A program made the position numbers and the translations under genes. Shown here piece after piece: positions 1,563-21,468 of a DNA stretch of 64,000 bases; positions within the stretch are counted from its first letter, which is position 1; each line of letters starts with the position of its first letter. Location of the stretch: the IMG/VR virus record IMGVR_UViG_3300021520_000002, positions 1 through 64,000 of that record, one strand, 5' to 3'. Under the pieces are notes generated by a model that was not told the DNA's origin, ran no database searches, and saw only the letters and a list, made by a program, of their open reading frames with translations.

Positions 1563-2234
1563 ATGTTAGTTAAAATAGCTGGAAGGGTAAGAGGATTATT
1601 TGCCGGTAATTATCCCGACAATAGAGAAGATGAACAATTTCATTTAAATAATAGAGGTGATTGGCTTGTTGCACAAGCTTTACCTGAAAGAACTGAAATA
1701 GTTCGAATGGGAGATACTTGGCAAGTTGCAACAGCAAGTAATGCACCAACAGCTACACTTACTGCGTGGCCAACAACTGTAGCTGGACTTGGTATATGGA
1801 ATGGTGAACCACAAGGTGGTAAATGTTATATTATAGATTCTATAGCGGCAACAGAAATTATTGTTGATCAAACACAATCAAACTGTACTGCTTTATTTGT
1901 ATTAAATAATAAAACTCCAGTAGCCACACCAACACAAATTGGTGCTCAAACTATTAGATCAATGAGTGGAAGAACTTATGGTGGTAGATGTGTTATAGCT
2001 TTAACTGCAAACAATGTAACTGATGATGGTTGGTTTCCTGCTGGTAACTCTGTTGCTCCAGCTCCAGCTGTTGCTGGAAGTGGATGGAAACAAACTGATA
2101 TTCCAATAAATGGACTATATATCGTTCCTCCAGGTGGAATGTTTAGTGTTCAAGGAGTAAAAATTGCAAATCTTGCAGCCCAAATGATATACACAATTCG
2201 TTGGCATGAAGTCCAACTTATTTTAAAATCATAA
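1563..2234 (+). CDS. Tandem paralog 1 of 5 (GRVRGLFxGxYPxNREDE...RWHEVQ family), putative virion protein
   Basis: AAGGAGG RBS; clear similarity to the next four ORFs. Confidence 0.7.
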   Translation: MLVKIAGRVRGLFAGNYPDNREDEQFHLNNRGDWLVAQALPERTEIVRMGDTWQVATASNAPTATLTAWPTTVAGLGIWNGEPQGGKCYIIDSIAATEIIVDQTQSNCTALFVLNNKTPVATPTQIGAQTIRSMSGRTYGGRCVIALTANNVTDDGWFPAGNSVAPAPAVAGSGWKQTDIPINGLYIVPPGGMFSVQGVKIANLAAQMIYTIRWHEVQLILKS

Positions 2235-2251
2235 AGATGAGGTAGGAAACT

Positions 2252-2911
2252 ATGTTAATTAAAATAGCTGGAAGGGTAAGAGGATTTTTTGCCGGTAATT
2301 ATCCTGAAAATAAAGAAGATGAAGAATTTCATTTAAATACTAGAGGTGATATGCTTGTTGCACAAGGATTACCTGAAAGAGCTGAACTTACTAGATTAGG
2401 AGATTCTTGGACAGCTTCAAATACAACAGGGATTGCTGCTTTAACTGGTTGGCCAACAACAACAGCAGGATTTGGTATATGGAATGGTGAACCTTCTAAT
2501 GGTAAATGTTATGTTATAGATTCAGTTTCTTGTACAGATATTGTTGTTGATGCAACACAAGGTGATTGTACTGCTTTATTTGTTATGCTTAATAAACCAC
2601 CTGTTGCTCTACCTGCTGGTGGACAACTTATCCGTGGATTAAGTGGAAGAACTTATGGTGGTAGAGCATTAACAGTTTTAACAGCTGTTGCTAGAGTAGA
2701 TGAAGGTTGGTTTCCAGCAGGATCTTCAGCAACTGTTGGAGCAACTGTTGCTGGTTGTAACTTTAAACAACAATATGCTCCATTAAATGGAATGTATATT
2801 GTGCCTCCAGGTGGAATGTTCAGTGTTGCTGCTGCAAAAGTAGCTGCTGCTGCTGCACAAGTTGTATATACAATTTGTTGGCATGAAGTCCAACTTATTC
2901 TAAAATCATAA
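2252..2911 (+). CDS. Tandem paralog 2 of 5
   Basis: Same N- and C-terminal motifs as paralog 1. Confidence 0.7.
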   Translation: MLIKIAGRVRGFFAGNYPENKEDEEFHLNTRGDMLVAQGLPERAELTRLGDSWTASNTTGIAALTGWPTTTAGFGIWNGEPSNGKCYVIDSVSCTDIVVDATQGDCTALFVMLNKPPVALPAGGQLIRGLSGRTYGGRALTVLTAVARVDEGWFPAGSSATVGATVAGCNFKQQYAPLNGMYIVPPGGMFSVAAAKVAAAAAQVVYTICWHEVQLILKS

Positions 2912-2928
2912 AGATGAGGTAGGAAACT

Positions 2929-3603
2929 ATGTTAATTAAAATAGCTGGAAGAGTAAGAGGATTATTTACCGGTAATTATCCTGAAAATAGAGAAGATGAA
3001 GAGTCACATATAAATAGTAGAGGAGATAATTTATTAATTCAAGGATTACCGGAAAAAACTGAATTAGTTAGACATGGTGATTCATGGCAAGTTAGAAACA
3101 CTACTGCAGTTGCAGCTAGAACAGCACTCCCAACGACTAACCCAGGACTTGGAATTTATAATGGTGAACCAACTGGTGGTAAAAGTTATATTATAGATTC
3201 TGTAGCTTGTACAGAAATTGTTGTTGACGCAACACAATCAGATTGTACTGCTTTAATGGTTTGTATGAATAAACTTCCATTAGCAGTTATACCTTTAGCA
3301 AATTATGATGTTTTAGTTCCAAAATCATTAAGTGGAGGAGGAGCATATCCTGGTAAAGCAATATTTCAATTAATAGCTAGAACTTGTGTTAATGATGGTT
3401 GGTATGCTTGTGGAGATTCTGTACCGGTTGCTACAGCAGTTGCCGGTAGCGGATGGAAACAAACTGATGTCGATGTTAGAGGAATGTATATTGTGCCTCC
3501 AGGTGGCCAATTTAATGTTAATGCTGTTAAAGTAGCTGCAGCTGCCAGTCAATGTTCATATACAATTCGTTGGCATGAAGTTCTTATTTTATATAAAACA
3601 TAA
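2929..3603 (+). CDS. Tandem paralog 3 of 5
   Basis: Same motifs; upstream junction is identical to that of paralog 2. Confidence 0.7.
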   Translation: MLIKIAGRVRGLFTGNYPENREDEESHINSRGDNLLIQGLPEKTELVRHGDSWQVRNTTAVAARTALPTTNPGLGIYNGEPTGGKSYIIDSVACTEIVVDATQSDCTALMVCMNKLPLAVIPLANYDVLVPKSLSGGGAYPGKAIFQLIARTCVNDGWYACGDSVPVATAVAGSGWKQTDVDVRGMYIVPPGGQFNVNAVKVAAAASQCSYTIRWHEVLILYKT

Positions 3604-3618
3604 GTGAGGTATAAAAAC

Positions 3619-4281
3619 ATGTCTGAAATAGCAAGAATGTTAGGAAGGGTAAGAGGATTATTTGCCGGTAAATATCCTGAAAATAGAGAAGATGAACAAT
3701 TTCATCTGGACAATATGGGAAATAATATAGTTACTCAAGCACTTCCACCACTTACAGAAATAGTAAGACTTGGTGATTCATGGCAAGTTATGAGTGCAGC
3801 TTTTGCTGGAATAACAACTGTCGGTTCAACAGCAGGAATGTTTACTATGTGGAATGGTGAGGGTGGTAATGGAAAAATATATATTATAGATTCTATAGCT
3901 CTAACTAAAGTAGTTATTGATACTACACAATTAGAAGGTGGATTTTCTCTTCTTGTTCAGATTATTAGATCTATGGCAGCTCCAACTCATGTTGAATATA
4001 CACCATCTGGTTTAAGTGGTAAAAGATATGGTGGTCGTTGTCGAACTCTTGCGTCTTCAACTACAGTGGCTGCTAGTTGGGATATGGTTGGTTCCTCAGG
4101 AAATCCAGCGAGAGCTACTAATGGGTCTGGTTGGCAACAAGTTGATATAAATTTATTTGGAAAATATATACTTCGTCCTGGTGATGCTCTTACACTTCAA
4201 ATATCTGAAGTGACAGCCACAGCTGCAAAATTCAGATCAACAGTAAGATGGCATGAAGTTCAGATACCGTATGTAACATAA
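3619..4281 (+). CDS. Tandem paralog 4 of 5
   Basis: ATG at 3619 after GAGG (MSEIARMLGRVRG); closest to paralog 5. Confidence 0.7.
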   Translation: MSEIARMLGRVRGLFAGKYPENREDEQFHLDNMGNNIVTQALPPLTEIVRLGDSWQVMSAAFAGITTVGSTAGMFTMWNGEGGNGKIYIIDSIALTKVVIDTTQLEGGFSLLVQIIRSMAAPTHVEYTPSGLSGKRYGGRCRTLASSTTVAASWDMVGSSGNPARATNGSGWQQVDINLFGKYILRPGDALTLQISEVTATAAKFRSTVRWHEVQIPYVT

Positions 4282-4294
4282 GTGAGGAAAGAAC

Positions 4295-4957
4295 ATGGCT
4301 CAATTTGGAAAAATGTTAGGAAGAGTAAGAGGATTATTTACCGGTAATTATCCTGAAAATAGAGAAGATGAACAATTTCATGTAGACAATATGGGAAATA
4401 ATATAGTTACTCAAGCACTTCCACCACTTACTGAAATAGTAAGACTTGGTGATTCATGGCAGGTTATGGGAGTTGCATATGCAGCATTAACAGGTGTTGG
4501 TTCAACAGCAGGAAGATTAACTATATGGAATGGTGAACCCTCTAATGGAAAAATATATATTATAGATTCTATAGCTTATACTAAAATTATTATAGATACT
4601 ACACAATTAGAAGGTGGATTTTCTTGTTTGGTTCAAATTATTAAACAAATGACAATACCAACTGATGCTGCTTATGTACCAGCTGGTTTAAGTGGTAAAA
4701 GATATGGTGGTAGAATGAGAACTGTTGCTACTTCAACTACATTAGCTGCTAACTGGGATATGGTTGGTTCTTCAGGAAATCCAGCTGCTGTTATTGCTGG
4801 ATCAGCTTGGCAACAAGTTGATATAAATTTATTTGGAAAATATATACTTCGTCCTGGTGATGCTTTTGCAATTAATATATCAGAAGTAACAAATACAGCC
4901 TCAAAATTTAGAACAACAATAAGATGGCATGAAGTTCAGATACCGTATGTATTTTAG
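4295..4957 (+). CDS. Tandem paralog 5 of 5
   Basis: Long identical blocks with paralog 4 (DNMGNNIVTQALPPLTEIVRLGDSWQVM; WQQVDINLFGKYILRPGDA). Confidence 0.7.
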   Translation: MAQFGKMLGRVRGLFTGNYPENREDEQFHVDNMGNNIVTQALPPLTEIVRLGDSWQVMGVAYAALTGVGSTAGRLTIWNGEPSNGKIYIIDSIAYTKIIIDTTQLEGGFSCLVQIIKQMTIPTDAAYVPAGLSGKRYGGRMRTVATSTTLAANWDMVGSSGNPAAVIAGSAWQQVDINLFGKYILRPGDAFAINISEVTNTASKFRTTIRWHEVQIPYVF

Positions 4958-5559: not shown

Positions 5560-6645
5560 ATGAGAACTGATTTTTTTAGAAATAGATTATTTATGGGTGA
5601 TATAAAACAGATGCAATCAGAGTTTTTAGTTCCAGAAATTTCTAGTTTAATTGGTTGGTATATTGGTGATGATCTATCGGCAAATTTTGCCGATGAAGAT
5701 GCTATCTTTGCTTGGAAAGATCATTATTCTGGAAATACAGCATATCAAGAAGATGATACTATTACTCAAAGACCTGTTTATAAAGCAAATATAATTAATG
5801 ATCATGGTGTTGCTAGATTTGATAATGCTACATATTCACAAAATTTAATACTTACTAATCCAAAACCATCAACAAAAACTGCTTTTATTGTTGCTAAGAA
5901 AACAGCCACAAGTAATAGTTGTTCAGTTCTTTATCAAACAAATACTAATGTTTTTAATTTCCCAACACCAACCAGTGGAAATGGACAATTATCAATCTCT
6001 GAAGGAACAGTTACTGTTTATACTCATATGGTGGATGCAACTGGATTACACATATTAACAGCAAGAAGAGTATATTCAGATACAGCTTGTGTTGCTAGAG
6101 TAGATGGTGTTGAAGGTTTTCCAGCTAATACAGCAAATTATTGGAATATATCACGTATAGGTTATAATGGTACACGAACTTCATGTTTTGATGGGGATAT
6201 TGCAGAAGTAATATTATTTTCAGATATATTATCTGATGCGAGTGTTATAACTATAGAATGTTATTTATCAAATAAATATGGAATTACTTTTACTGGAGAA
6301 ATGACTGAATCTGTATTAGTATCTGCTGACTGGACATTTGAAAATGCTGCTTGGTCAATAACCGCTGGTGTTTTAAGCTGTACAGGTTCAGGAAATTGTT
6401 ATCCTAATTATGCTGCTCAATCTCCTCCAAAAGTTGGATTAGGTTATGATATTGTTATAACAGTAACAGCTTGTTCTGGAACAATATATTTTTCTTATGC
6501 TGGTAATGCAACAACATTTGAGTTTTCATCAACTGGTACAAAAACATATACAAATATAATAACTTCTGATGCAACAACAATGTATTTAATGAGTATTGGT
6601 GGTACATGTTCTATATCAGCTATAAGTTGTAAAGAACATGTATAA
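5560..6645 (+). CDS. LamG/concanavalin-like domain protein with C-terminal carbohydrate-binding-like domain
   Basis: W-x-D-x-SGN, RPVYKANIIN and FDGDIAEVILF...IECYLSNKYGI signatures; C-terminus is homologous to 34025..34435. Confidence 0.6.
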   Translation: MRTDFFRNRLFMGDIKQMQSEFLVPEISSLIGWYIGDDLSANFADEDAIFAWKDHYSGNTAYQEDDTITQRPVYKANIINDHGVARFDNATYSQNLILTNPKPSTKTAFIVAKKTATSNSCSVLYQTNTNVFNFPTPTSGNGQLSISEGTVTVYTHMVDATGLHILTARRVYSDTACVARVDGVEGFPANTANYWNISRIGYNGTRTSCFDGDIAEVILFSDILSDASVITIECYLSNKYGITFTGEMTESVLVSADWTFENAAWSITAGVLSCTGSGNCYPNYAAQSPPKVGLGYDIVITVTACSGTIYFSYAGNATTFEFSSTGTKTYTNIITSDATTMYLMSIGGTCSISAISCKEHV

Positions 6646-6658
6646 TGGAGGTTCATAA

Positions 6659-7381
6659 ATGTATCAAAGAAATAGATATGAATCAGGACCTACACAATTA
6701 GGTAGACCATGGTTGCCAATAGATGTTCCTAATTGTAAATTATGGGTACCGGCACATTCATATATTGGTGCTGATAATGATGCTGTTGGTACTTGGCCAG
6801 ATTTAAGTGGAAATAATAATCATCCAACTCAAGGAACTACTACTAGAAAAGCAATATATAAAACAAATATTCTTAATGGTTATCCAATAATGAGAGCTGA
6901 TGGAACTACACGAATGTCATTCACAGAAATAACAGATATTCGAGCTTGTTATGCTGTTGTTAAAAAAGATGATGTTTCCAATTCAAGTACTTATATAACG
7001 ACAGATCAATCTAATACTGGATATATTCAGTGTTCTGATGAAAATCCTGGAAACACATCTCATCGTGGTAGAATAAGTGGACAAGATATTGAAGCTGGAC
7101 CAGTATTTACAGTCGCAAATACTTGGCATATTTCTGCGATGATATCATATGGTACATATAGAATAATGCGAGTTGATGGAGTAACAGTTACTTGGGCAGC
7201 GATAACTGGTGATCATCAGGTATATCAGGATCTTCTTTATGATTATGACGCTGGTTATTCTTATGATGGTGATATGGCAGAATGTATTATTTATACAACT
7301 GCTGATTTAACATTAAGAAACATGTATTTAATTGAAAGATATTTAGCTATTAAATATGGTTTAACTACTGGTTTGAAATAA
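6659..7381 (+). CDS. LamG/concanavalin-like domain protein
   Basis: LWV...VGTWPDLSGNNNH...YDGDMAECIIY...IERYLAIKYGL; paralogous to the preceding ORF. Confidence 0.6.
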   Translation: MYQRNRYESGPTQLGRPWLPIDVPNCKLWVPAHSYIGADNDAVGTWPDLSGNNNHPTQGTTTRKAIYKTNILNGYPIMRADGTTRMSFTEITDIRACYAVVKKDDVSNSSTYITTDQSNTGYIQCSDENPGNTSHRGRISGQDIEAGPVFTVANTWHISAMISYGTYRIMRVDGVTVTWAAITGDHQVYQDLLYDYDAGYSYDGDMAECIIYTTADLTLRNMYLIERYLAIKYGLTTGLK

Positions 7382-7412: not shown

Positions 7413-7796
7413 ATGGCTGAAGATTATACAAAAATACTTCTAGAGTTAACAGATCGTCAGTTTAGAAGATATGATGAAACGATTGATGATGTTGCTCGAC
7501 TAGAAATTAAAACTCAAGATTTAGAAGTATCAATCAATAGATTTGATGTGGATTTAGATAATGAGAAAAAAGAACGTGTAAAAATAGAATTGTCAATTAA
7601 AGAGAATATAGACAATTTACATAAAGTTGATAAATCTTTATCAAATTTATCTGGAAGAGTTTGGGTGATAATTGGTTTTTTTATGGCTATTATTGGTTCA
7701 GCAACAGGAGTTCTTATTCATGTTTTTTCTAAAATTGGAGATATTTCTGGTAAAATTGGATGGTTAGAAGGATCACTTTCAAAAATTATTAAATAG
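7413..7796 (+). CDS. Coiled-coil protein with C-terminal transmembrane helix (possible lysis accessory)
   Basis: Heptad-rich N-terminus followed by VWVIIGFFMAIIGSATGVLIHVF. Confidence 0.5.
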   Translation: MAEDYTKILLELTDRQFRRYDETIDDVARLEIKTQDLEVSINRFDVDLDNEKKERVKIELSIKENIDNLHKVDKSLSNLSGRVWVIIGFFMAIIGSATGVLIHVFSKIGDISGKIGWLEGSLSKIIK

Positions 7797-7805
7797 AGGG
7801 TTAGA

Positions 7806-10565
7806 ATGTTAACTGAAGACATAAAAAATAAATATCAAATTCAAAGAGAAAAAGCGGCAGCAGATCTTGCCGAAATAAAAAATATAATAACTTTAATAGA
7901 AAAGAAAGACAGTCAAATAAAAGAGAAATGTGATTTTTTACAAACTCTAGTTGATAGTTTACCAACTCCAATTTATGTTAAAGATCTTAATTTAAGATAT
8001 AAAGTTTGTAATGATGCTTTAGCCATTTTAATGGGAGTTAATAGAGAAAGTATTATCGGCAAAACTCTAACAGAGATCTATTCAGATAATGATGAAAGTA
8101 GATTTATGTATGAAAAAGATATGGAACTTCTTGAAAATGGTGGAACACAAACTTTCGATTATGAAATTGCTGGGATAGGTAAACATCCACAAATTTTAAA
8201 TTTTAACAGATCTATATTTAGAGATGAAAATAGACAGATTGCTGGTATTATTGGTTCTTGTTTTGATATAACTGATAGAGTTAAAAAAGAAAAAGAACTT
8301 AGGGTAGAAAGAGAAAAATTTTATAATGCTTTTGATCAGAGTCCTATACCTAAAGTAATAATACAATATGGAACAGGATTAATTTTAGAGATCAACGAAA
8401 CAGCATTAGAAATGTTTGGTTTTACTCGAGAAGAAATTAAAGACAAAACTGTATATGATTTAAGAACGAATAGTGGAAAATCATTAATTAAAGATTATCA
8501 AGATTTTACTCAAGAATTTTTCTTAAGTCAATTAGATGAAAATAATGGTAGAATTAAAAGTATTGATATTATTATATATACTAAAAATGATGAAGAAAAA
8601 GTTATAGCACTTTCAGCTTCAAAGTATCGAGTTAATGGTGGATTTTGTGTTTTATCTATTTTAAAAGATATTACATATCGAGTATTAGCTGAAAATAAGG
8701 TAAAACAAATTCAACGTAATTATGAAATATTTTTTAACACAATTAATGAATTTCTTTTTGTTCTTGATGAAAATGGAAATATCATTCATATGAATTCGAC
8801 AGTTATTGATCGTCTTGGATATACTAAAGAAGAACTTAAATGTATGAATATTATTTCTCTTCATCCAATTGAACGTCAGGATGATACTAAAAAAATTATT
8901 AGAGATATGCTTGATAAAATTATATCAATATGTCCAATTCCAATCATTACAAAACAAGGCATTCAAATACCAGTTGAAACAAAAATTGCACATGGAGTTT
9001 GGAATGATAAACCTGTAATTTTTGGTGTTTCAAAAGATATTTCAGATCTTAAACTATCAGAAGAAAAATTTTCAAAATTATTTTATATTAATCCGACTGT
9101 TTGTGGTTTAAGTGAATTTGATTCTCATCGATATATTGATGTTAATGAAGCTTTTTATACTTTGCTTGGTTTTGAAAAAGACGAAGTTATTGGTAAAACA
9201 GTACATGAATTAAATATTATAACTCATGATCAAATGAATAAAATATTATTAAATGCTGATATTAATGGAAATATAAAGAATATTGAATCTGATATAAGAT
9301 CTAAAAATGGTAATATAAAACATGTTATATTTTCTTCAGAGAGTTTTTTTGTTCAAGATAAAAAATATCGGTTTGTAGTAGTTCAGGATATTACTGAAAG
9401 AAAAAGAATGGAACAAGAAAATATTAAAATAAAAGAAGAATGGGAAGAAACTTTTAATGTTGTTCCTGAGCTTATTGCTATTTTAGATAATGATCATACT
9501 ATAATTAGAGTTAACAAATCTTTTACCGATAGATTTAATAATTCAATGGATTATTTTATCGGCAAGAAATGTTATGAAATTGTTCATAATAATGATAATG
9601 TACCAGAAGAATGTCCACATGCTCAATTATTATTAGATGGAAAACAACATGTTCAGGAAGGATATGATAATCTTCTTAAAGGTTATTTTATAGTAACTTG
9701 TTCTCCAATATTTAATGATAATAAAGAATTGATTGGAAGTGTACATTCAATGATTGATATTACTAAGAGGAAAGAAACAGAAGATAAACTTAAAGAAATT
9801 AGTGAACAATACCAAACTGCTATAGAATTATCAAATGATGCTGTAGCTATTGTTCAAGATGGTAAACATGTTTTTGTTAATAAAAGATTTTTAGAAATTT
9901 TTGGAATTGATTCTTTTGAAGATATTATTGGTAAAGAATATATTAATGTTTATCATAATGATATTGAATTTGTTAGAGATATAAATAGAAGAAGAACTGA
10001 AGGATTAAGAGTACCAAGTAAATATGAATTTAGAGGTTTAAAACTTGGTGATAGAAGAAGTATGTGTATTGAAGTTTCAGCGGCAAAAATTACTTATAAA
10101 GGTAGAGTGGCTACTTTATCATATCTAAGAGATGTTACTGAAAGAAAGAGATATGAGCAATTTCAAAATTTGCCGATATCAACTTTAGATACTATTCCAG
10201 AAATGGTTTGTAGACACGATTCTAATTTTAAATTTACATACGCTAATGAAACATATTGTAAGTTTATTGGTAAGACAAGAGAAAAACTTGAAACTATGAC
10301 TTTATTTGATTTTATGCCATCAGAAGAAGTTGAAAGAGTAAAAGATTATTTAGCTTCTTTTTCAGTTAATAAAACATCTAGTAGTATAGTTAATAAAGTA
10401 ATATTATATAGTGGAGAAATTGTTTACATATATTGGATGAATAGAGCATTTTTCGATTCTGATAATCAATTAATTGAATTACAATCGATAGGTAGAGTTA
10501 GTGATGTATTCGAAATAGAAGATAAGTCAAATAGAAGATTGGATAAGAAAAATTTGGAGAGATAA
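7806..10565 (+). CDS. Multi-PAS/PAC domain protein (about 7 PAS domains), no kinase or GGDEF output domain
   Basis: Six PAC ends (DITDR, DITYR, DISDL, DITER, DITKR, DVTER) plus a seventh PAS (IPEMVCRHD...YANETYC...WMNRAFFD...QSIGR). No H-box or GGDEF follows. Confidence 0.85.
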   Translation: MLTEDIKNKYQIQREKAAADLAEIKNIITLIEKKDSQIKEKCDFLQTLVDSLPTPIYVKDLNLRYKVCNDALAILMGVNRESIIGKTLTEIYSDNDESRFMYEKDMELLENGGTQTFDYEIAGIGKHPQILNFNRSIFRDENRQIAGIIGSCFDITDRVKKEKELRVEREKFYNAFDQSPIPKVIIQYGTGLILEINETALEMFGFTREEIKDKTVYDLRTNSGKSLIKDYQDFTQEFFLSQLDENNGRIKSIDIIIYTKNDEEKVIALSASKYRVNGGFCVLSILKDITYRVLAENKVKQIQRNYEIFFNTINEFLFVLDENGNIIHMNSTVIDRLGYTKEELKCMNIISLHPIERQDDTKKIIRDMLDKIISICPIPIITKQGIQIPVETKIAHGVWNDKPVIFGVSKDISDLKLSEEKFSKLFYINPTVCGLSEFDSHRYIDVNEAFYTLLGFEKDEVIGKTVHELNIITHDQMNKILLNADINGNIKNIESDIRSKNGNIKHVIFSSESFFVQDKKYRFVVVQDITERKRMEQENIKIKEEWEETFNVVPELIAILDNDHTIIRVNKSFTDRFNNSMDYFIGKKCYEIVHNNDNVPEECPHAQLLLDGKQHVQEGYDNLLKGYFIVTCSPIFNDNKELIGSVHSMIDITKRKETEDKLKEISEQYQTAIELSNDAVAIVQDGKHVFVNKRFLEIFGIDSFEDIIGKEYINVYHNDIEFVRDINRRRTEGLRVPSKYEFRGLKLGDRRSMCIEVSAAKITYKGRVATLSYLRDVTERKRYEQFQNLPISTLDTIPEMVCRHDSNFKFTYANETYCKFIGKTREKLETMTLFDFMPSEEVERVKDYLASFSVNKTSSSIVNKVILYSGEIVYIYWMNRAFFDSDNQLIELQSIGRVSDVFEIEDKSNRRLDKKNLER

Positions 10566-10570
10566 AGAAA

Positions 10571-10960
10571 ATGACAACAACTAAATGGATTTTAGTTTTA
10601 TTAGGTATTGTTGCTATATTTGGTTTAGCTTGGGGTGTTGATAATCATTTTAGAACTGCTAGTGAACAGAAACGTATTGATGCAGAAATTAAAAAGAAAA
10701 CGGATGAAATTACAAAAACATACACTGATCAAAAAACAGTTCTTGAAGGTCAAGTTACTAACAAGCAAAATGAGATAGCTAATAAAAACATTTTACTGAA
10801 AGAGAAGGATAAGAAACTTAAAGAGTCTGAAACAAAGGTAGCAGCACTTCAAGTTGATAAAGTTAGGTTAGAAAAACTGTTAGCGTCAGTTCTTCTTCCT
10901 ACAAATATTGAAGAGACAAAGAAAAGGTTACAAGATTTAGGAGTTGTATTATGCAAATAA
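10571..10960 (+). CDS. Putative inner-membrane spanin (Rz-like)
   Basis: N-terminal TM helix plus long coiled coil; overlaps the next ORF. Confidence 0.5.
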   Translation: MTTTKWILVLLGIVAIFGLAWGVDNHFRTASEQKRIDAEIKKKTDEITKTYTDQKTVLEGQVTNKQNEIANKNILLKEKDKKLKESETKVAALQVDKVRLEKLLASVLLPTNIEETKKRLQDLGVVLCK

Positions 10961-11439
10961 AACCATTATATAAGTATTTAGTTTTTGCCTTTAGTATTTT
11001 AATGTTCATTTTTCTTTTATTAGCATCCACAGCATTTTCTCAAGAAATTAAAACAATACCAATTCAAACTTGTGTTCCGATAAATTCTGATTCTGCAGCT
11101 AAGATGGTTGTTGAATTAGAACAGTGTCGAATTAGAACACAGGAACTGGATAACATCAATTTACAAGCAGGTGAATTGGTAAAACAAGTAGTTACTTATA
11201 AAGAGCGTGAAGAAATATTTCTTCAGAAAGAGGAACTATATAAACAAATAATTGAATTACAGAAACAACAGATAGTTGCAGCTGAGACTGCTATGACCCA
11301 ATATAAAGAACATATTAAGTTTGTTCAGACAAGTTATCAACAATTATTAAAAGATGCTAAACCAAATCCTTTTGTAGATTTTTTAAAATCTCTTTTATTT
11401 ATGGGAGCTGGTGTAGCAGCAGGAGTTGCTATTCATTAG
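10951..11439 (+). CDS. Secreted/membrane coiled-coil protein, possible spanin partner
   Basis: Signal-peptide-like N-terminus (no clear lipobox), coiled coil, hydrophobic C-terminus. Confidence 0.4.
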   Translation: MQIKPLYKYLVFAFSILMFIFLLLASTAFSQEIKTIPIQTCVPINSDSAAKMVVELEQCRIRTQELDNINLQAGELVKQVVTYKEREEIFLQKEELYKQIIELQKQQIVAAETAMTQYKEHIKFVQTSYQQLLKDAKPNPFVDFLKSLLFMGAGVAAGVAIH

Positions 11440-11454
11440 AAATGGAGGTTAATT

Positions 11455-11781
11455 ATGTTAGAGAGATTTAGAGCAGTATTTAAAGATAGTTGGAATTGGA
11501 CAATGATAGAACTTGAGCGTATGTGGTTTGTATTAATACTTTCAATATTGATAATTGTTCCAAGTGATAATCGTAGTATTGTTATTTTTGCATTGGGTAT
11601 TGTTACATTAACTACAATTGTTATGCATTTAACAAGAAAAACAATTTGGAGTTATATTGATCTTAAAAAATTAGTCGAGAAAGCGGCAGAATCGTCTACA
11701 GGTGCTGCAGTTGTTGTAGCTGCTGTTATATATTTAATGGCAGTAACAATTCAGTCTGTAATGATATTTTTAAAACCATAG
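11455..11781 (+). CDS. Putative holin (3 TM helices)
   Basis: 108 aa with three hydrophobic segments; WSYIDLKKLVEKAAESSTGAAVV loop; lies near the spanin-like and endolysin genes. Confidence 0.55.
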   Translation: MLERFRAVFKDSWNWTMIELERMWFVLILSILIIVPSDNRSIVIFALGIVTLTTIVMHLTRKTIWSYIDLKKLVEKAAESSTGAAVVVAAVIYLMAVTIQSVMIFLKP

Positions 11782-11788
11782 AAAGGGG

Positions 11789-12178
11789 GTGTGGTTGATC
11801 AAACGTTATATTGCTTATTTGGTTCGGTGGCAATTGTCGACACCTATTCTTGCACCTATAGTTGCTTACTTCAAACATTCACCAGGATTATTTGGTACTT
11901 TTGAAGATTGGATTGGTTCAGCAGTTGCTAATTTAGTTGGTGGATTAATCTTTTTCTGGATTGATAGATTTATATTTTATCATAAACTTAATTTTCCAAT
12001 ATGGCAGATAGAACAAGAAATAATATGTCATGATTGTGGTAAATTAGGAAGAGGTTATCGTTTAGTAAAAGATGATAATCTTAAATATGATAGAACTAAA
12101 GATTTACAACCAGAATTTAGATGTGAATATTGTTCCAAAATAAAACACAATACAATTTGTGTATCAGAATTAAATTAA
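11789..12178 (+). CDS. Membrane protein with C-terminal Cys4 zinc finger
   Basis: Hydrophobic N-terminal half; CHDC...CEYC. Confidence 0.5.
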   Translation: MWLIKRYIAYLVRWQLSTPILAPIVAYFKHSPGLFGTFEDWIGSAVANLVGGLIFFWIDRFIFYHKLNFPIWQIEQEIICHDCGKLGRGYRLVKDDNLKYDRTKDLQPEFRCEYCSKIKHNTICVSELN

Positions 12179-12196
12179 ATAAGGAGAAACAGAGAA

Positions 12197-12367
12197 ATGT
12201 CAGATGATAAGATAGTTTGTAAAGAATGTAACGAAGAATTTGAATTTACGGAAGGTGAACAGAAGTTTTTTGCCGATAAAGGATTTCCCGCACCTATAAG
12301 ATGTCCTGAATGTCGTAAGTCTAAAAAATCTAATGGCAATAAAAGTCAAGATGGTAACAAAAAATAA
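12197..12367 (+). CDS. Small zinc-ribbon protein (zf-trcl-like), absent from the ORF track
   Basis: AAGGAG RBS; MSDDKIVCKECNEEFEFTEGEQKFFADKGFPAPIRCPECRKSKK..., 56 aa. Confidence 0.75.
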   Translation: MSDDKIVCKECNEEFEFTEGEQKFFADKGFPAPIRCPECRKSKKSNGNKSQDGNKK

Positions 12368-12749
12368 AAGAAGAAAGAGATATCAATATAAAGGTAAAAG
12401 AATATCGAAGGGTGAAAAACGAGTTGCCCAGTTCTTAGACACGTATAATATAAACTACATAAGAGAATATAAATTCCTTGATTGTCTTAGTGAACTGGGT
12501 AACCCTCTTCGTTTTGATTTTTATTTACCAACATTTAATTTATTAATTGAATATGACGGAATGCAACATTTTAAGCCGATAAATAAATATCCAAAGGCAA
12601 AAAAATCTCATATACTAACAGTAGTTCATGATTATATTAAAAAGGTATATGTTGAGAAAAATAATATTTATTTTTTTAGAATTTCATATAAAGATTATGA
12701 AAATATTGAAACATTATTAAAACAGTTTTTAAACATAGGAGAGAACTAG
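12333..12749 (+). CDS. PD-(D/E)XK (DUF559/Vsr-like) endonuclease
   Basis: SKGE...LRFDFYLP...LIEYDGMQHF...RISY. Confidence 0.75.
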   Translation: MAIKVKMVTKNKRRKRYQYKGKRISKGEKRVAQFLDTYNINYIREYKFLDCLSELGNPLRFDFYLPTFNLLIEYDGMQHFKPINKYPKAKKSHILTVVHDYIKKVYVEKNNIYFFRISYKDYENIETLLKQFLNIGEN

Positions 12750-13347: not shown

Positions 13348-14130
13348 ATGAAGATTATTAGAATAATTTTAATGATAGTTATGGCTGGAGTAATTTTATG
13401 TTTTATTATTGGTGATTTATTTCCACAGGATAAAATTCCACCAAATTCAGTTCAATATCTTCCAGTACTTAAACAATTACTTGAAAGAGATTGGCCGCAA
13501 GGAACTCCTAAATCTTTAATGGCTGGTCAAGTTGAACAAGAGACTTGTATATCTTTAACTCATAAAAAATGTTGGTCACCAACAGCTGAATTAAAGACAA
13601 GTAGAGAATATGGCTTTGGATTAGGTCAAATAACTATTGCGTATGATGCTTCAGGTAAAGAACGTTTTAATAATTTTTTAGATGTTAAAAAAATAGATAA
13701 AAGATTAGAGAAGTGGGAATGGACTGATAGATATAATCCAAATTATCAACTACAAGCTTTAGTTATGAAAGATAGATATAATTATAATCTTATGAAAGGT
13801 TGGGCTGCTGATCACGAGAATAAGATGAATTTTACAATGAATGCTTATAATGGTGGTCTTGGTGGATTAATAAAAGATAGACAATTATGTCAAACTAAAG
13901 CTAATTGTAATCCAAATATTTGGTTTGGTAATGTTGCATTATATTCTTATAAAGCTAAAAATAAAGTTGCTGGCTATGGTAAATCGTTTTTTGAGATTAA
14001 TAGAGAATATGTTGATAATATTAGAAATAAGAGAAGTGCTAAATATACTAGTTATTTAGAACCATTACCGGCAAAAAAAGAAATCTTGCCGGTTAAAAAA
14101 GATTGTTGGATAACTTTAATATTTAAATAA
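13348..14130 (+). CDS. Lytic transglycosylase (SLT-like) endolysin with N-terminal signal/anchor
   Basis: ATG at 13348 after AAGGTGG; hydrophobic N-terminus; QVEQE (catalytic Glu), GFGLGQ, AYNGG, NREYV. Confidence 0.75.
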   Translation: MKIIRIILMIVMAGVILCFIIGDLFPQDKIPPNSVQYLPVLKQLLERDWPQGTPKSLMAGQVEQETCISLTHKKCWSPTAELKTSREYGFGLGQITIAYDASGKERFNNFLDVKKIDKRLEKWEWTDRYNPNYQLQALVMKDRYNYNLMKGWAADHENKMNFTMNAYNGGLGGLIKDRQLCQTKANCNPNIWFGNVALYSYKAKNKVAGYGKSFFEINREYVDNIRNKRSAKYTSYLEPLPAKKEILPVKKDCWITLIFK

Positions 14131-14147: not shown

Positions 14148-15839
14148 ATGATAAGAGAAATAAAAATAGATTTTTTAGAAAGAGTGAGAGTTGAAATTCT
14201 TGGAGAACCAGATGGTAATAAATATTTGGTAGAATTTATTAATCAAGATACTAGAATATTAGAATATTCAAGAGAGATGTATATTAATAATTGGGCAGTT
14301 TATATTAAATCATATTTTGTTAATTGGTTAATAAGAGTTACTGGACCAAATTATAAATATGAATATAAATATGATTGTACTGATAAAAAAGTAGTTGTTT
14401 ATTTTTCAGGTACAGGATTAGGTGATGCAATTGCTTGGTTACCAGCTTGTGTGGAATTTGTTAAGAAACATAATTGTAATTTATATGTTATGACAAATTG
14501 GGCAAAATTATTTAGTAAAGTTTATCCTGAAATCAACTTTGTAAATTTTGCCGATACAACAAATGAATATGCTCGATATAGAATTAATCTTTATCATAAT
14601 GATAAGAATAGAAATCACCAACCAAATGATTGGAGAACAATTCCTTTACAACAAATATCATCTGATATTCTTGGAATAGAATATAAAGAATCTGCTCCTA
14701 AAATAGATGTTAGTAATATAAAAACTTCTATGGTAAAAAGACCAAAAAAATATGTTTGTATATCTGAACATACTGCTTTAGGTTATTGTAAGTTATGGCA
14801 TTATCCAGGAGGATGGCAAGAAGTTGTTGATTATTTAATATCTAAAGATTATGAGGTTGTTGTTATAAGTACAGAACCAACTAAATTAGTTAATGTAATT
14901 GATATGACAAACAATTCTATTGAAGTTACTATGGGATTGTTAATGAATTGTGAGTTTTATATTGGAGTAGCATCTGGTTTAGCTTGGTTATCATGGACTT
15001 TAGGTAAGAGAGTTATTATGTTTTCTGGATTCAGTTTACCGTGGTGTGAGTTTCAAACAAACAACTATAGAATTTCTGGTGTAGGAAATTGTGTAGGTTG
15101 TTTACATGATGTATTTATCGACACATCCAGGTGGAACTCAAACTGTCCCAGAAACCAAGATAACACTTGTACTAAACAAATAACACCAAAGATGGTAACT
15201 AATATGATTGATAGATTGGTTCCATCAATAAACATTCCAATAAGTTCATTTCAAGGAGATTATGTGTTTGAAACTACAAAGGCAAATAAAAGAAGACAAA
15301 AGATAGAATTATTTCATAGAATTTTTAAAGGAAAAGGAATTGATATTGGTGCTGGTCAAGATAATGTAAATAAAGATAATATTTTTAAAGATGTTGAGTA
15401 TTGTGAGAGTTTTGATGTTGGACATGGAGATGCTCAATATATAAATTCTTATAAGCCAGAAAATTTTTATGATTTTGTACATAGTTCACATTGTTTAGAA
15501 CATATGGTTGATCCTTTTGAAGCTATTAAAAATTGGTTTTCTTTAGTTAAACCAGGTGGTTATTTAGTAGTTACAGTTCCAGATGAAGATTTATATGAAC
15601 AAGGATATTGGCCATCAAAGTTTTCAACATGTCACAATTGGACTATGACAATTAATAAAGAAAAATCATGGAGTCCAAAATCAGTTAATGTTTTAGGACT
15701 AATTCAATCTCTTGAAAAATATGAAATTATTAAAATTGAATTAGTTGATGTGAATTATAATTATTCTTTAAAGAATTTCGATCAATGTTTAAATGAAGCA
15801 GAATGTTGTGTTGAATTTATAATTCGTAAAAAAGAATAA
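14148..15839 (+). CDS. Aah/TibC-like (BAHT, GT9-related) glycosyltransferase fused to a C-terminal SAM methyltransferase
   Basis: GLGDAIAWLP, KLWHYPGGWQ, YIGVASGLAWLSW, SGFSLPWCEF, CxxC...CP...CT iron-finger cysteines; then IDIGAG...HSSHCLEH...KPGG. Confidence 0.75.
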   Translation: MIREIKIDFLERVRVEILGEPDGNKYLVEFINQDTRILEYSREMYINNWAVYIKSYFVNWLIRVTGPNYKYEYKYDCTDKKVVVYFSGTGLGDAIAWLPACVEFVKKHNCNLYVMTNWAKLFSKVYPEINFVNFADTTNEYARYRINLYHNDKNRNHQPNDWRTIPLQQISSDILGIEYKESAPKIDVSNIKTSMVKRPKKYVCISEHTALGYCKLWHYPGGWQEVVDYLISKDYEVVVISTEPTKLVNVIDMTNNSIEVTMGLLMNCEFYIGVASGLAWLSWTLGKRVIMFSGFSLPWCEFQTNNYRISGVGNCVGCLHDVFIDTSRWNSNCPRNQDNTCTKQITPKMVTNMIDRLVPSINIPISSFQGDYVFETTKANKRRQKIELFHRIFKGKGIDIGAGQDNVNKDNIFKDVEYCESFDVGHGDAQYINSYKPENFYDFVHSSHCLEHMVDPFEAIKNWFSLVKPGGYLVVTVPDEDLYEQGYWPSKFSTCHNWTMTINKEKSWSPKSVNVLGLIQSLEKYEIIKIELVDVNYNYSLKNFDQCLNEAECCVEFIIRKKE

Positions 15840-19187: not shown

Positions 19188-19745
19188 ATGGAAAGAAAAA
19201 GAAATGATCCTAATGAAATCATTGTTGAAGATGATATTTGTCGAATGAAATTATATAATAATAAATGTGAAGAAGTTGCAGAAACTATTTTTGATCTTAA
19301 ATATAAATCTGAAATTGAAAAATATAAGTGGCATTTACAAAAAGGTTATGTAGCAACTGATTGGTTTGATGAAAATGATAAACATGTACAAATGTGTTTA
19401 CATCAAGCAATCATTCAAATATCTGGACAAGAAGTACCAGAAGGATATGAAATAGATCACAAAGATACAATTAAATTAAATAATTTAGAAGAAAATTTAA
19501 GAGTTTGTACAAGATATCAAAATCAACATAATAGAACAAAACAAAGAAATAACACAAGTGGTTATAAAGGTATTACTTGGCAAGAACAATCTAAAAAATG
19601 GAGAGCTCAAATTCGTGTTAATAATAAAAAGATATTTTTAGGATTATTTGAAAAAGATTTAGATGCAGCACAAGCTTATAATAATGCCGCTCTTCAATAT
19701 CATGGAGAGTTTGCTCAAATAAATCCAATTTCAACAGGAGTATAA
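19188..19745 (+). CDS. HNH endonuclease with C-terminal AP2 DNA-binding domain (homing endonuclease)
   Basis: IDHKD...NNLEENLR...N; SGYKGITW...KWRAQI...LGLF...AAQAYN. Confidence 0.9.
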   Translation: MERKRNDPNEIIVEDDICRMKLYNNKCEEVAETIFDLKYKSEIEKYKWHLQKGYVATDWFDENDKHVQMCLHQAIIQISGQEVPEGYEIDHKDTIKLNNLEENLRVCTRYQNQHNRTKQRNNTSGYKGITWQEQSKKWRAQIRVNNKKIFLGLFEKDLDAAQAYNNAALQYHGEFAQINPISTGV

Positions 19746-20959: not shown

Positions 20960-21468
20960 TGGAAAATGTAGTAGAAAAAGAAAAGAAGTCAGTAGATTTT
21001 ATTTCAAGACAACAGAGACGTCAACAAGAAAGAGATCAAGAAAAGTATAATGAAGCAATGAGAAAACAGATGGCAGCAAATGCAACAAAAGGTGATTTGA
21101 TGATGTTGGTCCAATCATTTCAGAAACTGAGAGATAGATTGTTTCAGATGGATATTATTAATTCAGCTTTAGAAAAAATTATAATTAGTAAAGGACTTGC
21201 AACAAGAGATGAAATTAAAGAAGCTGTTGGTCAAGAAGCTAATAGAGCAGTAAAAATGAAAGAAGTATCTGAAGAAAAAGGAAATTATGAAAAGAGACTT
21301 GAAACATGTAAAGAATGGGATATAGTAGCTGATATGACTAATATTCCAATTCAAATTTTACAGGATAATTCTTTGACTGAAGTTCAGAAAAGAGAACTTG
21401 CTGAAAAATATGAATTACAAAGTGTTTTAGATAAATTAGACGGAAAAGAGGAAAATAAAAATGTTTGA
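20959..21468 (+). CDS. Hypothetical helical protein
   Basis: GGAGG RBS; charged, helical. Confidence 0.55.
   Translation: MENVVEKEKKSVDFISRQQRRQQERDQEKYNEAMRKQMAANATKGDLMMLVQSFQKLRDRLFQMDIINSALEKIIISKGLATRDEIKEAVGQEANRAVKMKEVSEEKGNYEKRLETCKEWDIVADMTNIPIQILQDNSLTEVQKRELAEKYELQSVLDKLDGKEENKNV

What the first reader, a model, noticed from the sequence alone, without database searches (positions are those of the whole stretch)
7413..11781. Output-less 7-PAS sensor protein embedded in a lysis-like membrane gene cluster
SEEN: a 919-aa protein made only of a short coiled coil and about 7 PAS/PAC domains. It lies between a coiled-coil/TM gene and spanin-like and holin-like genes, with 5-9 nt spacing. 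KNOWN: PAS arrays normally feed kinases or cyclases and are uncommon in phages. INFERENCE: it may sense host redox or metabolite state to time lysis, or act as a dominant-negative decoy of host sensor kinases. The domains look like a mosaic captured from host signalling genes.
Basis: partly seen in the sequence, partly recalled or inferred. Interest (0 to 1): 0.68.

Follow-up and report, generated by a model that had tools for sequence, protein, structure and literature searches.

The report
Output-less seven-PAS sensor in jumbo phage
A 286-kb freshwater phage encodes a conserved, intact protein made only of seven PAS sensor domains, paired with a small membrane-anchored protein and sitting at the front of its lysis genes, so the phage may sense the state of the cell, but what it controls is not shown.

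Summary
ORF 7806-10565 encodes 919 aa: an N-terminal helix, seven PAS domains, no output domain and no membrane segment.

It is not a decaying host kinase:
- Three related proteins (806, 660 and 436 aa), at least two of them on phage-like contigs, share the N-helix+PAS1+PAS2 core.
- Against the 806-aa relative, dN/dS is 0.12-0.18 in the five shared PAS domains.
- Cellular proteins match those five domains at no more than 47%.

Only PAS3-PAS4 looks host-like. It is about 60% identical to a didomain found in hundreds of mostly Bacteroidota kinases.

The lysis setting holds. In relatives, the two downstream membrane coiled-coil genes lead straight into holin-like and SLT endolysin genes. They are spanin-like in topology only, because there is no lipobox.

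The PAS gene is optional. Wherever it occurs, a small gene lies directly upstream; in the three cases with sequence it encodes a coiled coil plus one membrane segment. The nearest relative instead carries a multi-PAS/GAF histidine kinase and a receiver domain fused to a coiled coil and membrane anchor. An unrelated Sinorhizobium jumbo phage also pairs a small membrane coiled-coil gene with a PAS-only gene.

Best reading (about 0.35): a cytoplasmic sensor acting through the membrane partner on lysis timing. Ligand, partner binding and effect are inferred. I rate it a new variant of a known kind, interest 0.57.

The parts
7413..7796 (+). gp7413, 127 aa: N-terminal coiled coil (about aa 1-80), one TM (aa 82-106) and a 20-aa tail. 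The topology is tail-anchored. The gene lies directly upstream of the PAS gene.
   Evidence: Hydropathy. There are no Pfam or PHROG hits. Genes with the same architecture lie directly upstream of the PAS gene in L008/L012 (137 aa) and L017 (99 aa); P0003's contig has a 99-aa gene there, but no DNA is held. Sequence conservation is weak: 27% and 12%. An Atlas lead to DUF7201 is not confirmed by hmmscan.
7806..10565 (+). Output-less PAS protein, 919 aa: N-terminal helix plus 7 PAS domains, with no TM.
7806..8690 (+). Family-defining core: N-helix (aa 1-45), PAS1 (46-165) and PAS2 (166-295). It is shared by all four family members.
   Evidence: Domain BLAST and alignment. A core search gives only P0002, P0003 and P0137, then the score drops from 412 to 134 bits. 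dN/dS is 0.24, 0.15 and 0.12. PAS1 resembles the BvgS PAS structure 6zj8.
8691..9425 (+). PAS3-PAS4 didomain (aa 296-540) in the variable slot. It is a host-like cassette. It keeps H353 and C376-P377, which are invariant in the cellular didomain.
   Evidence: It is 55-62% identical over about 240 aa to more than 100 cellular kinases and to at least 544 loci in GTDB genomes, mostly Bacteroidota and Ignavibacteriales. Invariant columns come from A2 and residues. The slot is empty in P0003 and holds one unrelated PAS in P0002.
9426..10562 (+). PAS5-PAS6-PAS7 (aa 541-919): the C-terminal phage-lineage block. PAS5 carries C589, H594 and C603-P604, which are kept in all or nearly all of its cellular homologues.
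   Evidence: It is 62-78% identical to P0002 and P0003 but at most 47% to cellular proteins. dN/dS is 0.18, 0.12 and 0.14. The block is absent from P0137.
10571..10960 (+). gp10571, 129 aa: N-terminal TM plus a presumed periplasmic coiled coil, with a conserved C-terminal Cys. The topology is i-spanin-like.
   Evidence: Homologues are 41-84% identical in L012, L010, L015, L017 and L101.
10951..11439 (+). gp10951, 162 aa: signal-peptide-like N-terminus (SxA|QE site), two invariant Cys, a coiled coil and a Gly/Ala-rich hydrophobic C-terminus. It overlaps gp10571 by 10 nt. It has no lipobox.
   Evidence: The family has 16 clusters, aligned. The hydropathy of the C-terminus (about 1.57, hand-calculated from the sequence) is just under the 1.6 threshold used.
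11455..11781 (+). gp11455, 108 aa, about 3 TM: a holin candidate.
   Evidence: phrog_8226 holin, 6.5e-5. TM segments. It is 59% identical to L101:3260-3559. Genes at the same position in L015 and L010 hit holin phrog_1528, and those in L099 and L103 hit Pfam Holin_2-3; all of these hits are weak. hhalign to the L015/L010 type gives E 0.0011 at probability 20%.
11789..12178 (+). gp11789, 129 aa: a weak TM plus two C-terminal CxxC pairs (zinc-ribbon-like). Its role is unknown.
12333..12749 (+). HNH/homing endonuclease inserted in the cassette. It marks a plastic region.
   Evidence: phrog_559, 2e-28.
13348..14130 (+). Signal-anchored lytic transglycosylase-like protein, 260 aa. It is the only endolysin candidate found.
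   Evidence: phrog_669 endolysin, 1.3e-27. An N-terminal TM lies at aa 1-28. The E-Q-E-T, G-L-G-Q and A-Y-N-G-G motifs align with the SLT protein of L015. The genome has no Phage_lysozyme family match.

Best explanation
The 919-aa protein is a functional, phage-lineage, cytoplasmic signal-integrating sensor with no catalytic or DNA-binding output, so it must act by protein-protein contact.

I propose that it forms a two-gene module with the membrane-anchored coiled-coil protein encoded just upstream (gp7413). The invariant N-helix+PAS1+PAS2 would be the part that engages the partner. The variable C-terminal PAS domains would be interchangeable input modules: the host-like PAS3-4 didomain, and PAS5 with its Cys/His/Cys-Pro motif.

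The module sits at the head of the lysis cassette (two membrane coiled-coil proteins, holin candidate, SLT endolysin candidate). It most likely tunes when the envelope is breached according to the cell's internal state (redox, energy or a metabolite). In function this would be a sensory antiholin-like input.

The nearest relative seems to do the same kind of job by phosphorelay: a multi-PAS/GAF histidine kinase followed by a receiver-coiled coil-TM protein.

Shown: domain anatomy, family, purifying selection, synteny, and that the gene is optional.

Inferred: co-transcription, binding to gp7413, the ligand, and any effect on lysis.
For: 1. The gene is real and under selection. It has seven PAS domains, dN/dS of 0.12-0.18 in the five shared domains at dS 0.7-1.4, and the protein is better conserved (65%) than its neighbours (27-59%).
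2. The core is specific to a small phage family.
3. Domains come and go at exact linker boundaries, in frame.
4. In all four PAS-bearing contexts a small gene lies directly upstream, even in L017 where five genes separate the PAS gene from the membrane pair. In the three contexts with sequence it is a coiled coil plus one TM.
5. The membrane pair leads straight into holin-like and SLT genes in PAS-less relatives.
6. The nearest relative (membrane pair 84% and 78% identical, holin-like gene 59%) carries, upstream of the same pair, a kinase of at least 798 aa (PAS, GAF, HisKA_2, HATPase_c) and a receiver protein with a coiled coil and C-terminal TM.
7. Sinorhizobium jumbo phage Phosso is unrelated and also has an 81-aa TM+coiled-coil gene overlapping a 434-aa protein with three PAS domains and nothing else.
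8. No + strand terminator lies between the genes before 11707, inside the holin-like gene; all the genes have SD-like sites and gaps of 15 nt or less.
9. Contigs from RNA libraries, identical to the window, lie on the PAS gene and on the holin-like/HNH region. This is weak, because DNA carry-over is not excluded.
Against: - The binding test of gp7413(1-85) with PAS(1-165) returned no verdict, so there is no evidence for contact.
- gp7413 and the receiver protein's coiled-coil/TM part share no detectable sequence similarity. The analogy is architectural only.
- The kinase of the sister phage is not an orthologue (23% identity).
- The PAS gene is missing from relatives with the same lysis genes (L015, L010, L099), so lysis does not need it.
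- The region is plastic. An HNH endonuclease and a methyltransferase lie in the window's cassette, and a TubZ tubulin lies between the pair and the lysozyme in L012. Adjacency may therefore reflect an insertion hot spot.
- The holin assignment rests on weak hits.
- No cofactor signature (LOV NCRF, CxxCH) was found.
Confidence: 0.35

Rival explanations
1. It is an accessory regulator unrelated to lysis. The PAS protein, with or without gp7413, senses cell state but acts on something else, such as phage late gene expression, the neighbouring glycosyl/methyl-transferase functions, superinfection exclusion or host metabolism. It lies near the lysis genes only because this is a hot spot for accessory genes.
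For: The PAS gene is optional among relatives. Unrelated cargo sits in the same region: HNH and methyltransferase genes in the window, and TubZ and Peptidase_C92 genes in L012. In L017 five genes separate it from the membrane pair. In L010, L012 and L013 glycosyltransferase, methyltransferase or epimerase genes lie upstream of the module.
Against: In several lineages a sensory gene recurs just upstream of the same membrane pair: a PAS-only gene in three contexts and a kinase plus receiver in a fourth. In the sister phage the receiver is fused to a membrane anchor, which points to a membrane target, not DNA.
Confidence: 0.3
2. It is a decoy or mimic of host sensor kinases. The PAS domains, above all the PAS3-4 didomain that lies next to the kinase core in many cellular kinases, form mixed dimers with host kinases and silence or hijack two-component signalling during infection.
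For: PAS3-4 is about 60% identical to a didomain that is highly conserved (80% mean column identity) across many paralogous kinases, several per genome. It keeps that didomain's invariant His and Cys-Pro. There is no kinase or receiver in the phage genome. PAS-PAS heterodimerisation by output-less PAS proteins is an established mechanism, as in Drosophila PERIOD (my own knowledge).
Against: The didomain is not part of the family core: P0003 lacks it, P0002 has a different domain there, and P0137 has only a diverged PAS3 that lost those residues. The identity of about 60% is spread evenly over hundreds of proteins, so no specific target stands out. SD-like sites precede 76% of ORFs, which fits poorly with a Bacteroidota host, so the 'host' kinases may not be the host's. 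The likely late operon position suits a decoy less well.
Confidence: 0.2
3. It is a recently captured host kinase that lost its kinase end and is decaying.
For: All PAS domains have cellular kinase homologues, and PAS3-4 is host-like.
Against: dN/dS is 0.12-0.18. Four diverged family members share the architecture. The frame is intact, with the next gene 5 nt after the stop, which leaves no room for a kinase remnant. The core domains are at most 47% identical to any cellular protein.
Confidence: 0.03

Closest known systems
VqmA_Phage of vibriophage VP882 (PAS ligand-binding domain plus HTH; PMC8284805)
   Same: It is a phage-encoded PAS sensor that reads a host-derived cue and feeds a lysis decision.
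   Different: VqmA has one PAS domain and a DNA-binding output, and it acts on transcription in a temperate phage. The protein here has seven PAS domains, no output domain, no sequence relationship, and sits in a jumbo phage's late/lysis region.
Antiholin and lysis-inhibition systems (T4 RI/RIII with holin T; lambda S107) - my own knowledge
   Same: These are accessory phage proteins, encoded with or near lysis genes, that delay or tune holin triggering in response to a signal. RIII is cytoplasmic.
   Different: There is no homology. None of them has PAS domains or any recognised sensor fold. A role in lysis timing here is only inferred.
Output-less PAS proteins (Drosophila PERIOD; short LOV proteins; single-domain PAS regulators of the kind mentioned in PMC7200025) - largely my own knowledge
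   Same: They signal purely through protein-protein contacts made by PAS domains.
   Different: They have one or two PAS domains and are cellular. A seven-domain phage array with an exchangeable slot has not been described in the literature I could search.
Two-component spanins (lambda Rz/Rz1) and unimolecular spanins (T1 gp11) - my own knowledge
   Same: gp10571 has the i-spanin layout. The two genes overlap and lie within a lysis cassette. They have conserved Cys residues, as spanins do.
   Different: gp10951 has a signal-peptidase-I-type site, no lipobox and a hydrophobic C-terminus. It therefore meets neither the o-spanin nor the u-spanin definition.
434-aa PAS-only protein of Sinorhizobium jumbo phage Phosso (PV764938), with its 81-aa upstream gene
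   Same: It is a jumbo phage with a small TM+coiled-coil gene directly upstream (1-nt overlap) of a protein made only of PAS domains.
   Different: It is only 25% identical over 30% of the query. It has three PAS domains, the TM of the small protein is N-terminal, the neighbours are all hypothetical, and no lysis link is visible.
Sister-phage module on L101/L105: a PAS-GAF-HisKA_2-HATPase_c kinase plus a receiver-coiled coil-TM protein
   Same: It occupies the same locus, upstream of an 84%/78% identical membrane pair and a 59% identical holin-like gene. It has a multi-PAS sensor and a membrane-anchored coiled-coil protein.
   Different: It has a true kinase output and a phospho-acceptor domain. 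It is not orthologous (23% identity). The gene order is sensor then anchor, whereas in the window it is anchor then sensor.

Membership tests
PAS domain superfamily (Pfam PAS clan; TIGR00229 sensory box) | Domain matches above the curated thresholds | tested here: met
   PAS_9 183.9 bits (cut-off 27), PAS 157, PAS_4 157, PAS_3 86.6. TIGR00229 scores 265 bits in 7 stretches. There are 7 placements in the genome scan.
Two-component sensor histidine kinase | DHp (HisKA-type) and HATPase_c catalytic domains | tested here: not met
   The protein has neither. The only HATPase_c in the 286-kb genome lies in a Toprim/GyrB-type topoisomerase. The next gene starts 5 nt after the stop codon.
Two-component sensor histidine kinase | A cognate receiver-domain partner in the genome | tested here: not met
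   There is no Response_reg match in the virus record.
VqmA-type phage receptor | PAS domain fused to an HTH DNA-binding domain | tested here: not met
   No HTH or other DNA-binding family was found.
Two-component spanin (i-spanin plus o-spanin) | i-spanin: N-terminal TM with a periplasmic coiled-coil domain | tested here: met
   gp10571 has a TM within aa 1-26, followed by a coiled-coil-type sequence.
Two-component spanin (i-spanin plus o-spanin) | o-spanin: lipoprotein signal with a lipobox Cys | tested here: not met
   The 16-member alignment shows an SxA|QE signal-peptidase-I-type site. The invariant Cys lies 3-12 residues further on and is not in a lipobox context.
Two-component spanin (i-spanin plus o-spanin) | Adjacent or overlapping genes inside a lysis cassette | tested here: met
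   The genes overlap by 10 nt. In L015, L099 and L103 the pair is followed by a small TM gene, a holin-like gene and an SLT gene.
Unimolecular spanin | N-terminal lipoprotein signal plus a C-terminal TM | tested here: not met
   A C-terminal hydrophobic segment is present but there is no lipobox.
Holin (gp11455) | Small protein with one or more TM, encoded next to the endolysin, with a family match | tested here: inconclusive
   It is 108 aa with about 3 TM. Only weak profile hits were found: phrog_8226 at 6.5e-5, and weak hits for positional equivalents to phrog_1528 and Holin_2-3. The endolysin candidate lies 1.6 kb downstream.
Antiholin / lysis-timing regulator | Binds the holin or changes the lysis time | not testable with these tools
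   This needs an experiment. The one interaction prediction returned no verdict.

The most novel reading that the evidence does not exclude
A clade of freshwater jumbo phages carries exchangeable sensory cassettes at the head of the lysis operon. The cassette is either an output-less multi-PAS integrator with a membrane-anchored coiled-coil partner, or a PAS/GAF kinase with a receiver fused to such an anchor. Either form would gate envelope disruption according to the cell's redox or metabolic state. This would be a sensory lysis clock of a kind not described for any phage.
Probability: 0.2. Interest if true: 0.8.

Novelty: new variant of a known kind. Interest (0 to 1): 0.57.

Why it matters
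Known controls of lysis timing are the holin's own clock, antiholins and superinfection signals. A phage-encoded multi-input sensor wired to membrane proteins of the lysis cassette would show that lytic jumbo phages read the physiological state of the cell before they burst it.

The family also offers a natural experiment in domain exchange. It has a fixed N-terminal core and a slot that holds zero, one or two PAS domains, one version of which comes from a widespread cellular kinase didomain.

Two observations turn the idea into a testable two-protein hypothesis. A sister phage has a kinase plus a membrane-anchored receiver at the same place. An unrelated Sinorhizobium jumbo phage also pairs a small membrane protein with a PAS-only protein.

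If the module proves unrelated to lysis, it is still one of very few sensor proteins known in phages.

Tried and rejected
- **Interaction prediction.** gp7413(1-85) with PAS(1-165) scored 0.01 against a mark of 0.34. The verdict was 'no answer', and I do not use it for or against binding.
- **AlphaFold2 of the PAS3-4 didomain** with a 14-row alignment gave mean pLDDT 60.9 and pTM 0.41. That is too low for a fold search, so none was run.
- **IMG/VR pattern scans** with the protein, with the three-member alignment and with the sister phage's receiver protein found nothing.
- **Megablast** of the first 20 kb against 50,697 phage records found no match.
- **Tree of PAS3** (107 rows). The careful search did not finish, and the quick tree is unresolved. 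One capture cannot be told from two. The window's PAS3 is 56% identical to L017's, less than to the best cellular hit at 65%.
- **gp7413 identity.** An Atlas lead to DUF7201 (score 0.91) was not confirmed by hmmscan even at E<=5. A hit of the L017 homologue to XhlA has E 0.18 and is not significant.
- **PADLOC** found no defence-system match worth noting.
- **Sigma-70 promoter scan** gave no more sites than shuffled sequence.
- **Cofactor motifs** (LOV NCRF, CxxCH) are absent, and no ligand could be assigned.
- **Similarity between gp7413 and the receiver protein's coiled-coil/TM part**: none.
- **The large representative search** was not used. The word searches answered the family question, and the library carries no genomic context.
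- **Literature searches** found no description of PAS-only phage proteins.

Full report
**Where the window lies.** The window is the first 64 kb of a 285,572-bp IMG/VR virus record. CheckV rates it 95% complete, it is linear, and its G+C content is about 30%. Nearly all genes are on the + strand. The finding lies between virion-type genes upstream and glycosyl/methyl-transferase genes downstream. The upstream genes are LamG-like paralogues that hit phrog_10356 'virion structural protein'. The downstream ones appear. The same DNA is held by lake and freshwater metagenomes from at least six studies.

**The observation.** ORF 7806-10565 encodes 919 aa.
- Pfam reports only PAS families: PAS_9 at 7.8e-55, PAS at 2.1e-46, plus PAS_4, PAS_8 and PAS_3.
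- TIGR00229 matches seven stretches at E 9.1e-80.
- A six-frame scan of the whole genome places seven PAS_9 matches, all in this ORF.
- No kinase, cyclase, phosphodiesterase or DNA-binding family matches, and there is no hydrophobic segment.
- The first 45 residues form a charged helix that runs into the N-cap of PAS1.

**It is a selected phage gene, not a kinase wreck.** A word search of 5.8 billion proteins found two PAS-only relatives: P0002 (806 aa) and P0003 (660 aa, 15 member sequences). After them come hundreds of cellular kinases. A second search restricted to the N-terminal core added P0137 (436 aa). It showed a sharp drop from 412 to 134 bits, so the family is very small.

Domain-by-domain BLAST gives the following picture:

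| Domains | Identity to P0002/P0003 | Identity to cellular proteins |
|---|---|---|
| PAS1, 2, 5, 6, 7 | 53-82% | at most 47% |
| PAS3 and PAS4 | no counterpart | 58-65% |

P0137 covers only the N-helix to PAS3 and is 54% identical to the window over aa 13-436.

Against the relative on contig L008, Nei-Gojobori dN/dS is 0.12-0.18 for the five shared domains, at dS 0.7-1.4. The PAS protein (65% identical) is also better conserved than its neighbours (27%, 41% and 59%). The next gene starts 5 nt after the stop codon, so no kinase remnant can be hidden there. The phage genome has no receiver domain. Its only HATPase_c lies in a Toprim/GyrB-type topoisomerase.

**A fixed core and an exchangeable slot.** The alignment of P0001, P0002 and P0003 shows a clean in-frame gap between the end of PAS2 and the start of PAS5.
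- The slot is empty in P0003.
- In P0002 it holds one PAS domain. That domain is 29% identical to P0002's own PAS1, so it is not a recent duplicate.
- In the window it holds PAS3 and PAS4.
- P0137 has the N-helix, PAS1, PAS2 and a PAS3-like domain, and stops at the first residues of PAS4.

Only the N-helix, PAS1 and PAS2 are common to all four.

**The host-like part.** PAS3-PAS4 matches, as one collinear unit of about 240 aa and at 55-62% identity, more than 100 kinases in the hit list. It also matches at least 544 loci in species-representative genomes. Most are Bacteroidota and Ignavibacteriales MAGs from lakes and sediments, often with several copies per genome. In short kinases the didomain sits directly before the kinase core.

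The cellular copies are very alike, with 80% mean column identity. The window keeps their invariant H353 and C376-P377. P0137's PAS3 has lost these residues (read). A tree could not tell one capture from two.

PAS5 belongs to a subfamily with a conserved Cys...His...Cys-Pro pattern: C589, H594 and C603-P604. No LOV or haem-c motif is present. Sequence matches to solved structures are generic PAS domains: 3mjq, BvgS 6zj8 and 3bwl. The ligands remain unknown.

**The neighbourhood is a lysis cassette.** The 162-aa protein family has 16 clusters. Contexts of several clusters:
- **L015/L016** (85% identical): 130-aa homologue of gp10571, the 162-aa protein, a 55-aa TM protein, a 108-aa protein that hits holin phrog_1528, then a 196-aa SLT protein (phrog_669, 3.8e-21). 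A portal gene is nearby.
- **L099/L100 and L103/L104**: the same order, with weak Holin_2-3 hits and an SLT protein.
- **L012 to L014**: the pair is followed by TubZ tubulin, Peptidase_C92, a 52-aa TM protein, Phage_lysozyme and a 99-aa TM protein.
- **The window**: the pair is followed by a three-TM holin candidate (phrog_8226, 6.5e-5), a TM/zinc-ribbon protein, an HNH endonuclease, a methyltransferase and a signal-anchored SLT-like protein. That last protein hits phrog_669 at 1.3e-27 and has motifs that align with L015's SLT protein.

'Lysis-like membrane gene cluster' is therefore supported by synteny. 'Spanin-like' holds for topology only. gp10571 has the i-spanin layout. The second protein has a signal-peptidase-I-type site, two invariant Cys, no lipobox and a hydrophobic C-terminus.

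**The PAS gene is an accessory with a constant companion.**
- L015, L010/L011 and L099 have the pair and the lysis genes but no PAS gene.
- In every PAS-bearing context a small gene lies directly upstream. These contexts are the window, L008/L012-14, P0003's contig and L017.
- Where sequence is held, that gene encodes a coiled coil, one TM and a short tail. P0003's contig has a 99-aa gene there, but no DNA is held.
- This is so even in L017, where five genes lie between the PAS gene and the pair.
- The small protein evolves fast: 27% and 12% identity.

**Two further pieces of context.**

First, the nearest relative found is L101/L102/L105. Its pair is 84% and 78% identical to the window's, and its holin-like gene is 59% identical. 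Upstream of the pair it encodes a 5'-truncated kinase of at least 798 aa with PAS_3, PAS, GAF_2, HisKA_2 and HATPase_c domains. This is followed by a 262-aa protein with a complete receiver domain, a coiled coil and a C-terminal TM. The kinase is not an orthologue of the window's protein (23% identity). The receiver protein's anchor shows no sequence similarity to gp7413. The resemblance is one of architecture and position.

Second, the only hit in 50,697 deposited phage genomes is the 469-kb Sinorhizobium phage Phosso. There, an 81-aa TM+coiled-coil gene overlaps by one base a 434-aa protein made of three PAS domains and nothing else.

So a 'small membrane coiled-coil protein plus cytoplasmic PAS sensor' arrangement appears in two unrelated jumbo phages. 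In a third, the anchor is fused to a receiver domain.

**Mechanism.** A PAS array without an output can only signal by contact. The constant N-terminal core and the constant upstream companion make gp7413 the likeliest partner. Its membrane location, the position at the head of the lysis genes, and the membrane-anchored receiver in the sister phage all point to a membrane target. I therefore favour a cytoplasmic sensor that tunes the timing of envelope disruption through gp7413 (confidence about 0.35).

None of the binding or timing steps is shown. The single interaction prediction gave no verdict.

The rivals are:
- an accessory regulator with another target, sitting in a plastic region (0.3);
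- a decoy of host kinases acting through the PAS3-4 didomain (0.2), weakened because that didomain is not part of the family core;
- a decaying kinase fragment (0.03), contradicted by selection and conservation.

**Expression.** There is no + strand terminator between the genes before 11707, inside the holin-like gene, and every start has an SD-like site. Contigs from two metatranscriptomic libraries of lake samples that hold the phage lie on 8132-8336 and 9779-10060 (PAS gene), and on 11651-11924 and 12070-12459. All have no mismatches. These are contigs, and DNA carry-over cannot be excluded, so this is only a hint of transcription.

**Host.** The best hits of PAS3-4 suggest Bacteroidota or Ignavibacteriota. 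However, 76% of ORFs of 120 aa or more have GGAG, GAGG or AGGA 5-18 nt upstream of the start, against 6% at random sites. To my knowledge that is unusual for Bacteroidota and their phages. The host is open.

**Novelty.** I found no paper describing PAS-only phage proteins. The nearest described case is VqmA_Phage, which has one PAS domain plus an HTH (PMC8284805). PAS domains, output-less PAS proteins and lysis regulators are each known. What is new is the combination: a clade-specific seven-PAS array with a domain slot, a membrane companion, and alternative sensory cassettes at the same lysis-proximal locus. I class it as a new variant of a known kind, with interest 0.57.

Noticed in passing
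L101:3-1410, L105:1-3166 (sister-phage contigs): The nearest relative carries a multi-PAS/GAF HisKA_2 histidine kinase (at least 798 aa, cut at its 5' end by the contig). Next to it is a 262-aa receiver protein fused to a coiled coil and a C-terminal TM, upstream of the same membrane pair. A phage-encoded two-component pair with a membrane-anchored receiver is unusual in its own right.
   Followed up: partly
L108:3249-4798 (Sinorhizobium phage Phosso, PV764938 332586-334135): An 81-aa N-terminal-TM plus coiled-coil gene overlaps by 1 nt a 434-aa protein with three PAS domains and no output. This is an independent second example of the two-gene arrangement in an unrelated 469-kb phage.
   Followed up: partly
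window 1563-4957: Five tandem paralogous genes of 219-225 aa, 40-77% identical to each other. The first has no Pfam match; the others were not scanned. They lie in the virion-gene region.
   Followed up: partly
whole genome G000: SD-like motifs (GGAG, GAGG, AGGA) lie 5-18 nt upstream of 76% of ATG ORFs of 120 aa or more, against 6% at random sites. This fits poorly with the Bacteroidota host suggested by the PAS3-4 hits.
   Followed up: partly
window 9426-9785 (PAS5) and 8691-9065 (PAS3): PAS5 has C589, H594 and C603-P604, kept in all or nearly all of its cellular homologues, and PAS3 has H353 and C376-P377, invariant across its cellular homologues. They may be cofactor, metal or redox sites. 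P0137's PAS3 has lost the PAS3 residues.
   Followed up: partly
L012:10457-11665 (and L008, L013, L014): A relative has a TubZ-like tubulin and a Peptidase_C92 gene between the membrane pair and its lysozyme. The window's genome has no tubulin match.
   Followed up: no
window 12333-12749 and 19188-19745: Two HNH-type homing endonuclease genes. The second has an HNH_3 plus an AP2 domain, and the first sits inside the lysis cassette.
   Followed up: no
window 14148-15839 and 21461-25276: Large fusion proteins of glycosyltransferase (GT9, GT1) and methyltransferase domains, 563 and 1271 aa. Relatives carry similar sugar-modification clusters next to the module.
   Followed up: no
window 11789-12178: A 129-aa protein with a weak TM and two C-terminal CxxC pairs (zinc-ribbon-like), directly after the holin candidate. 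It has no family match.
   Followed up: no
window 5560-6645 and 6659-7381: Two adjacent LamG/concanavalin-like paralogues, 29% identical, that hit phrog_10356 'virion structural protein'. They are probably fibre or receptor-binding parts.
   Followed up: no
L015:9283-9621, L017:6058-6435, L101:1410-1790: A conserved 112-126-aa protein with an HExxH motif (phrog_13761) recurs just upstream of the membrane pair in relatives. None of the window ORFs compared matched it.
   Followed up: no
window 8298 to 11757: One DNA contig in run X3 joins these two places, skipping 3,458 bases. The shorter side is only 20 letters, so it is probably a repeat or another organism.
   Followed up: no
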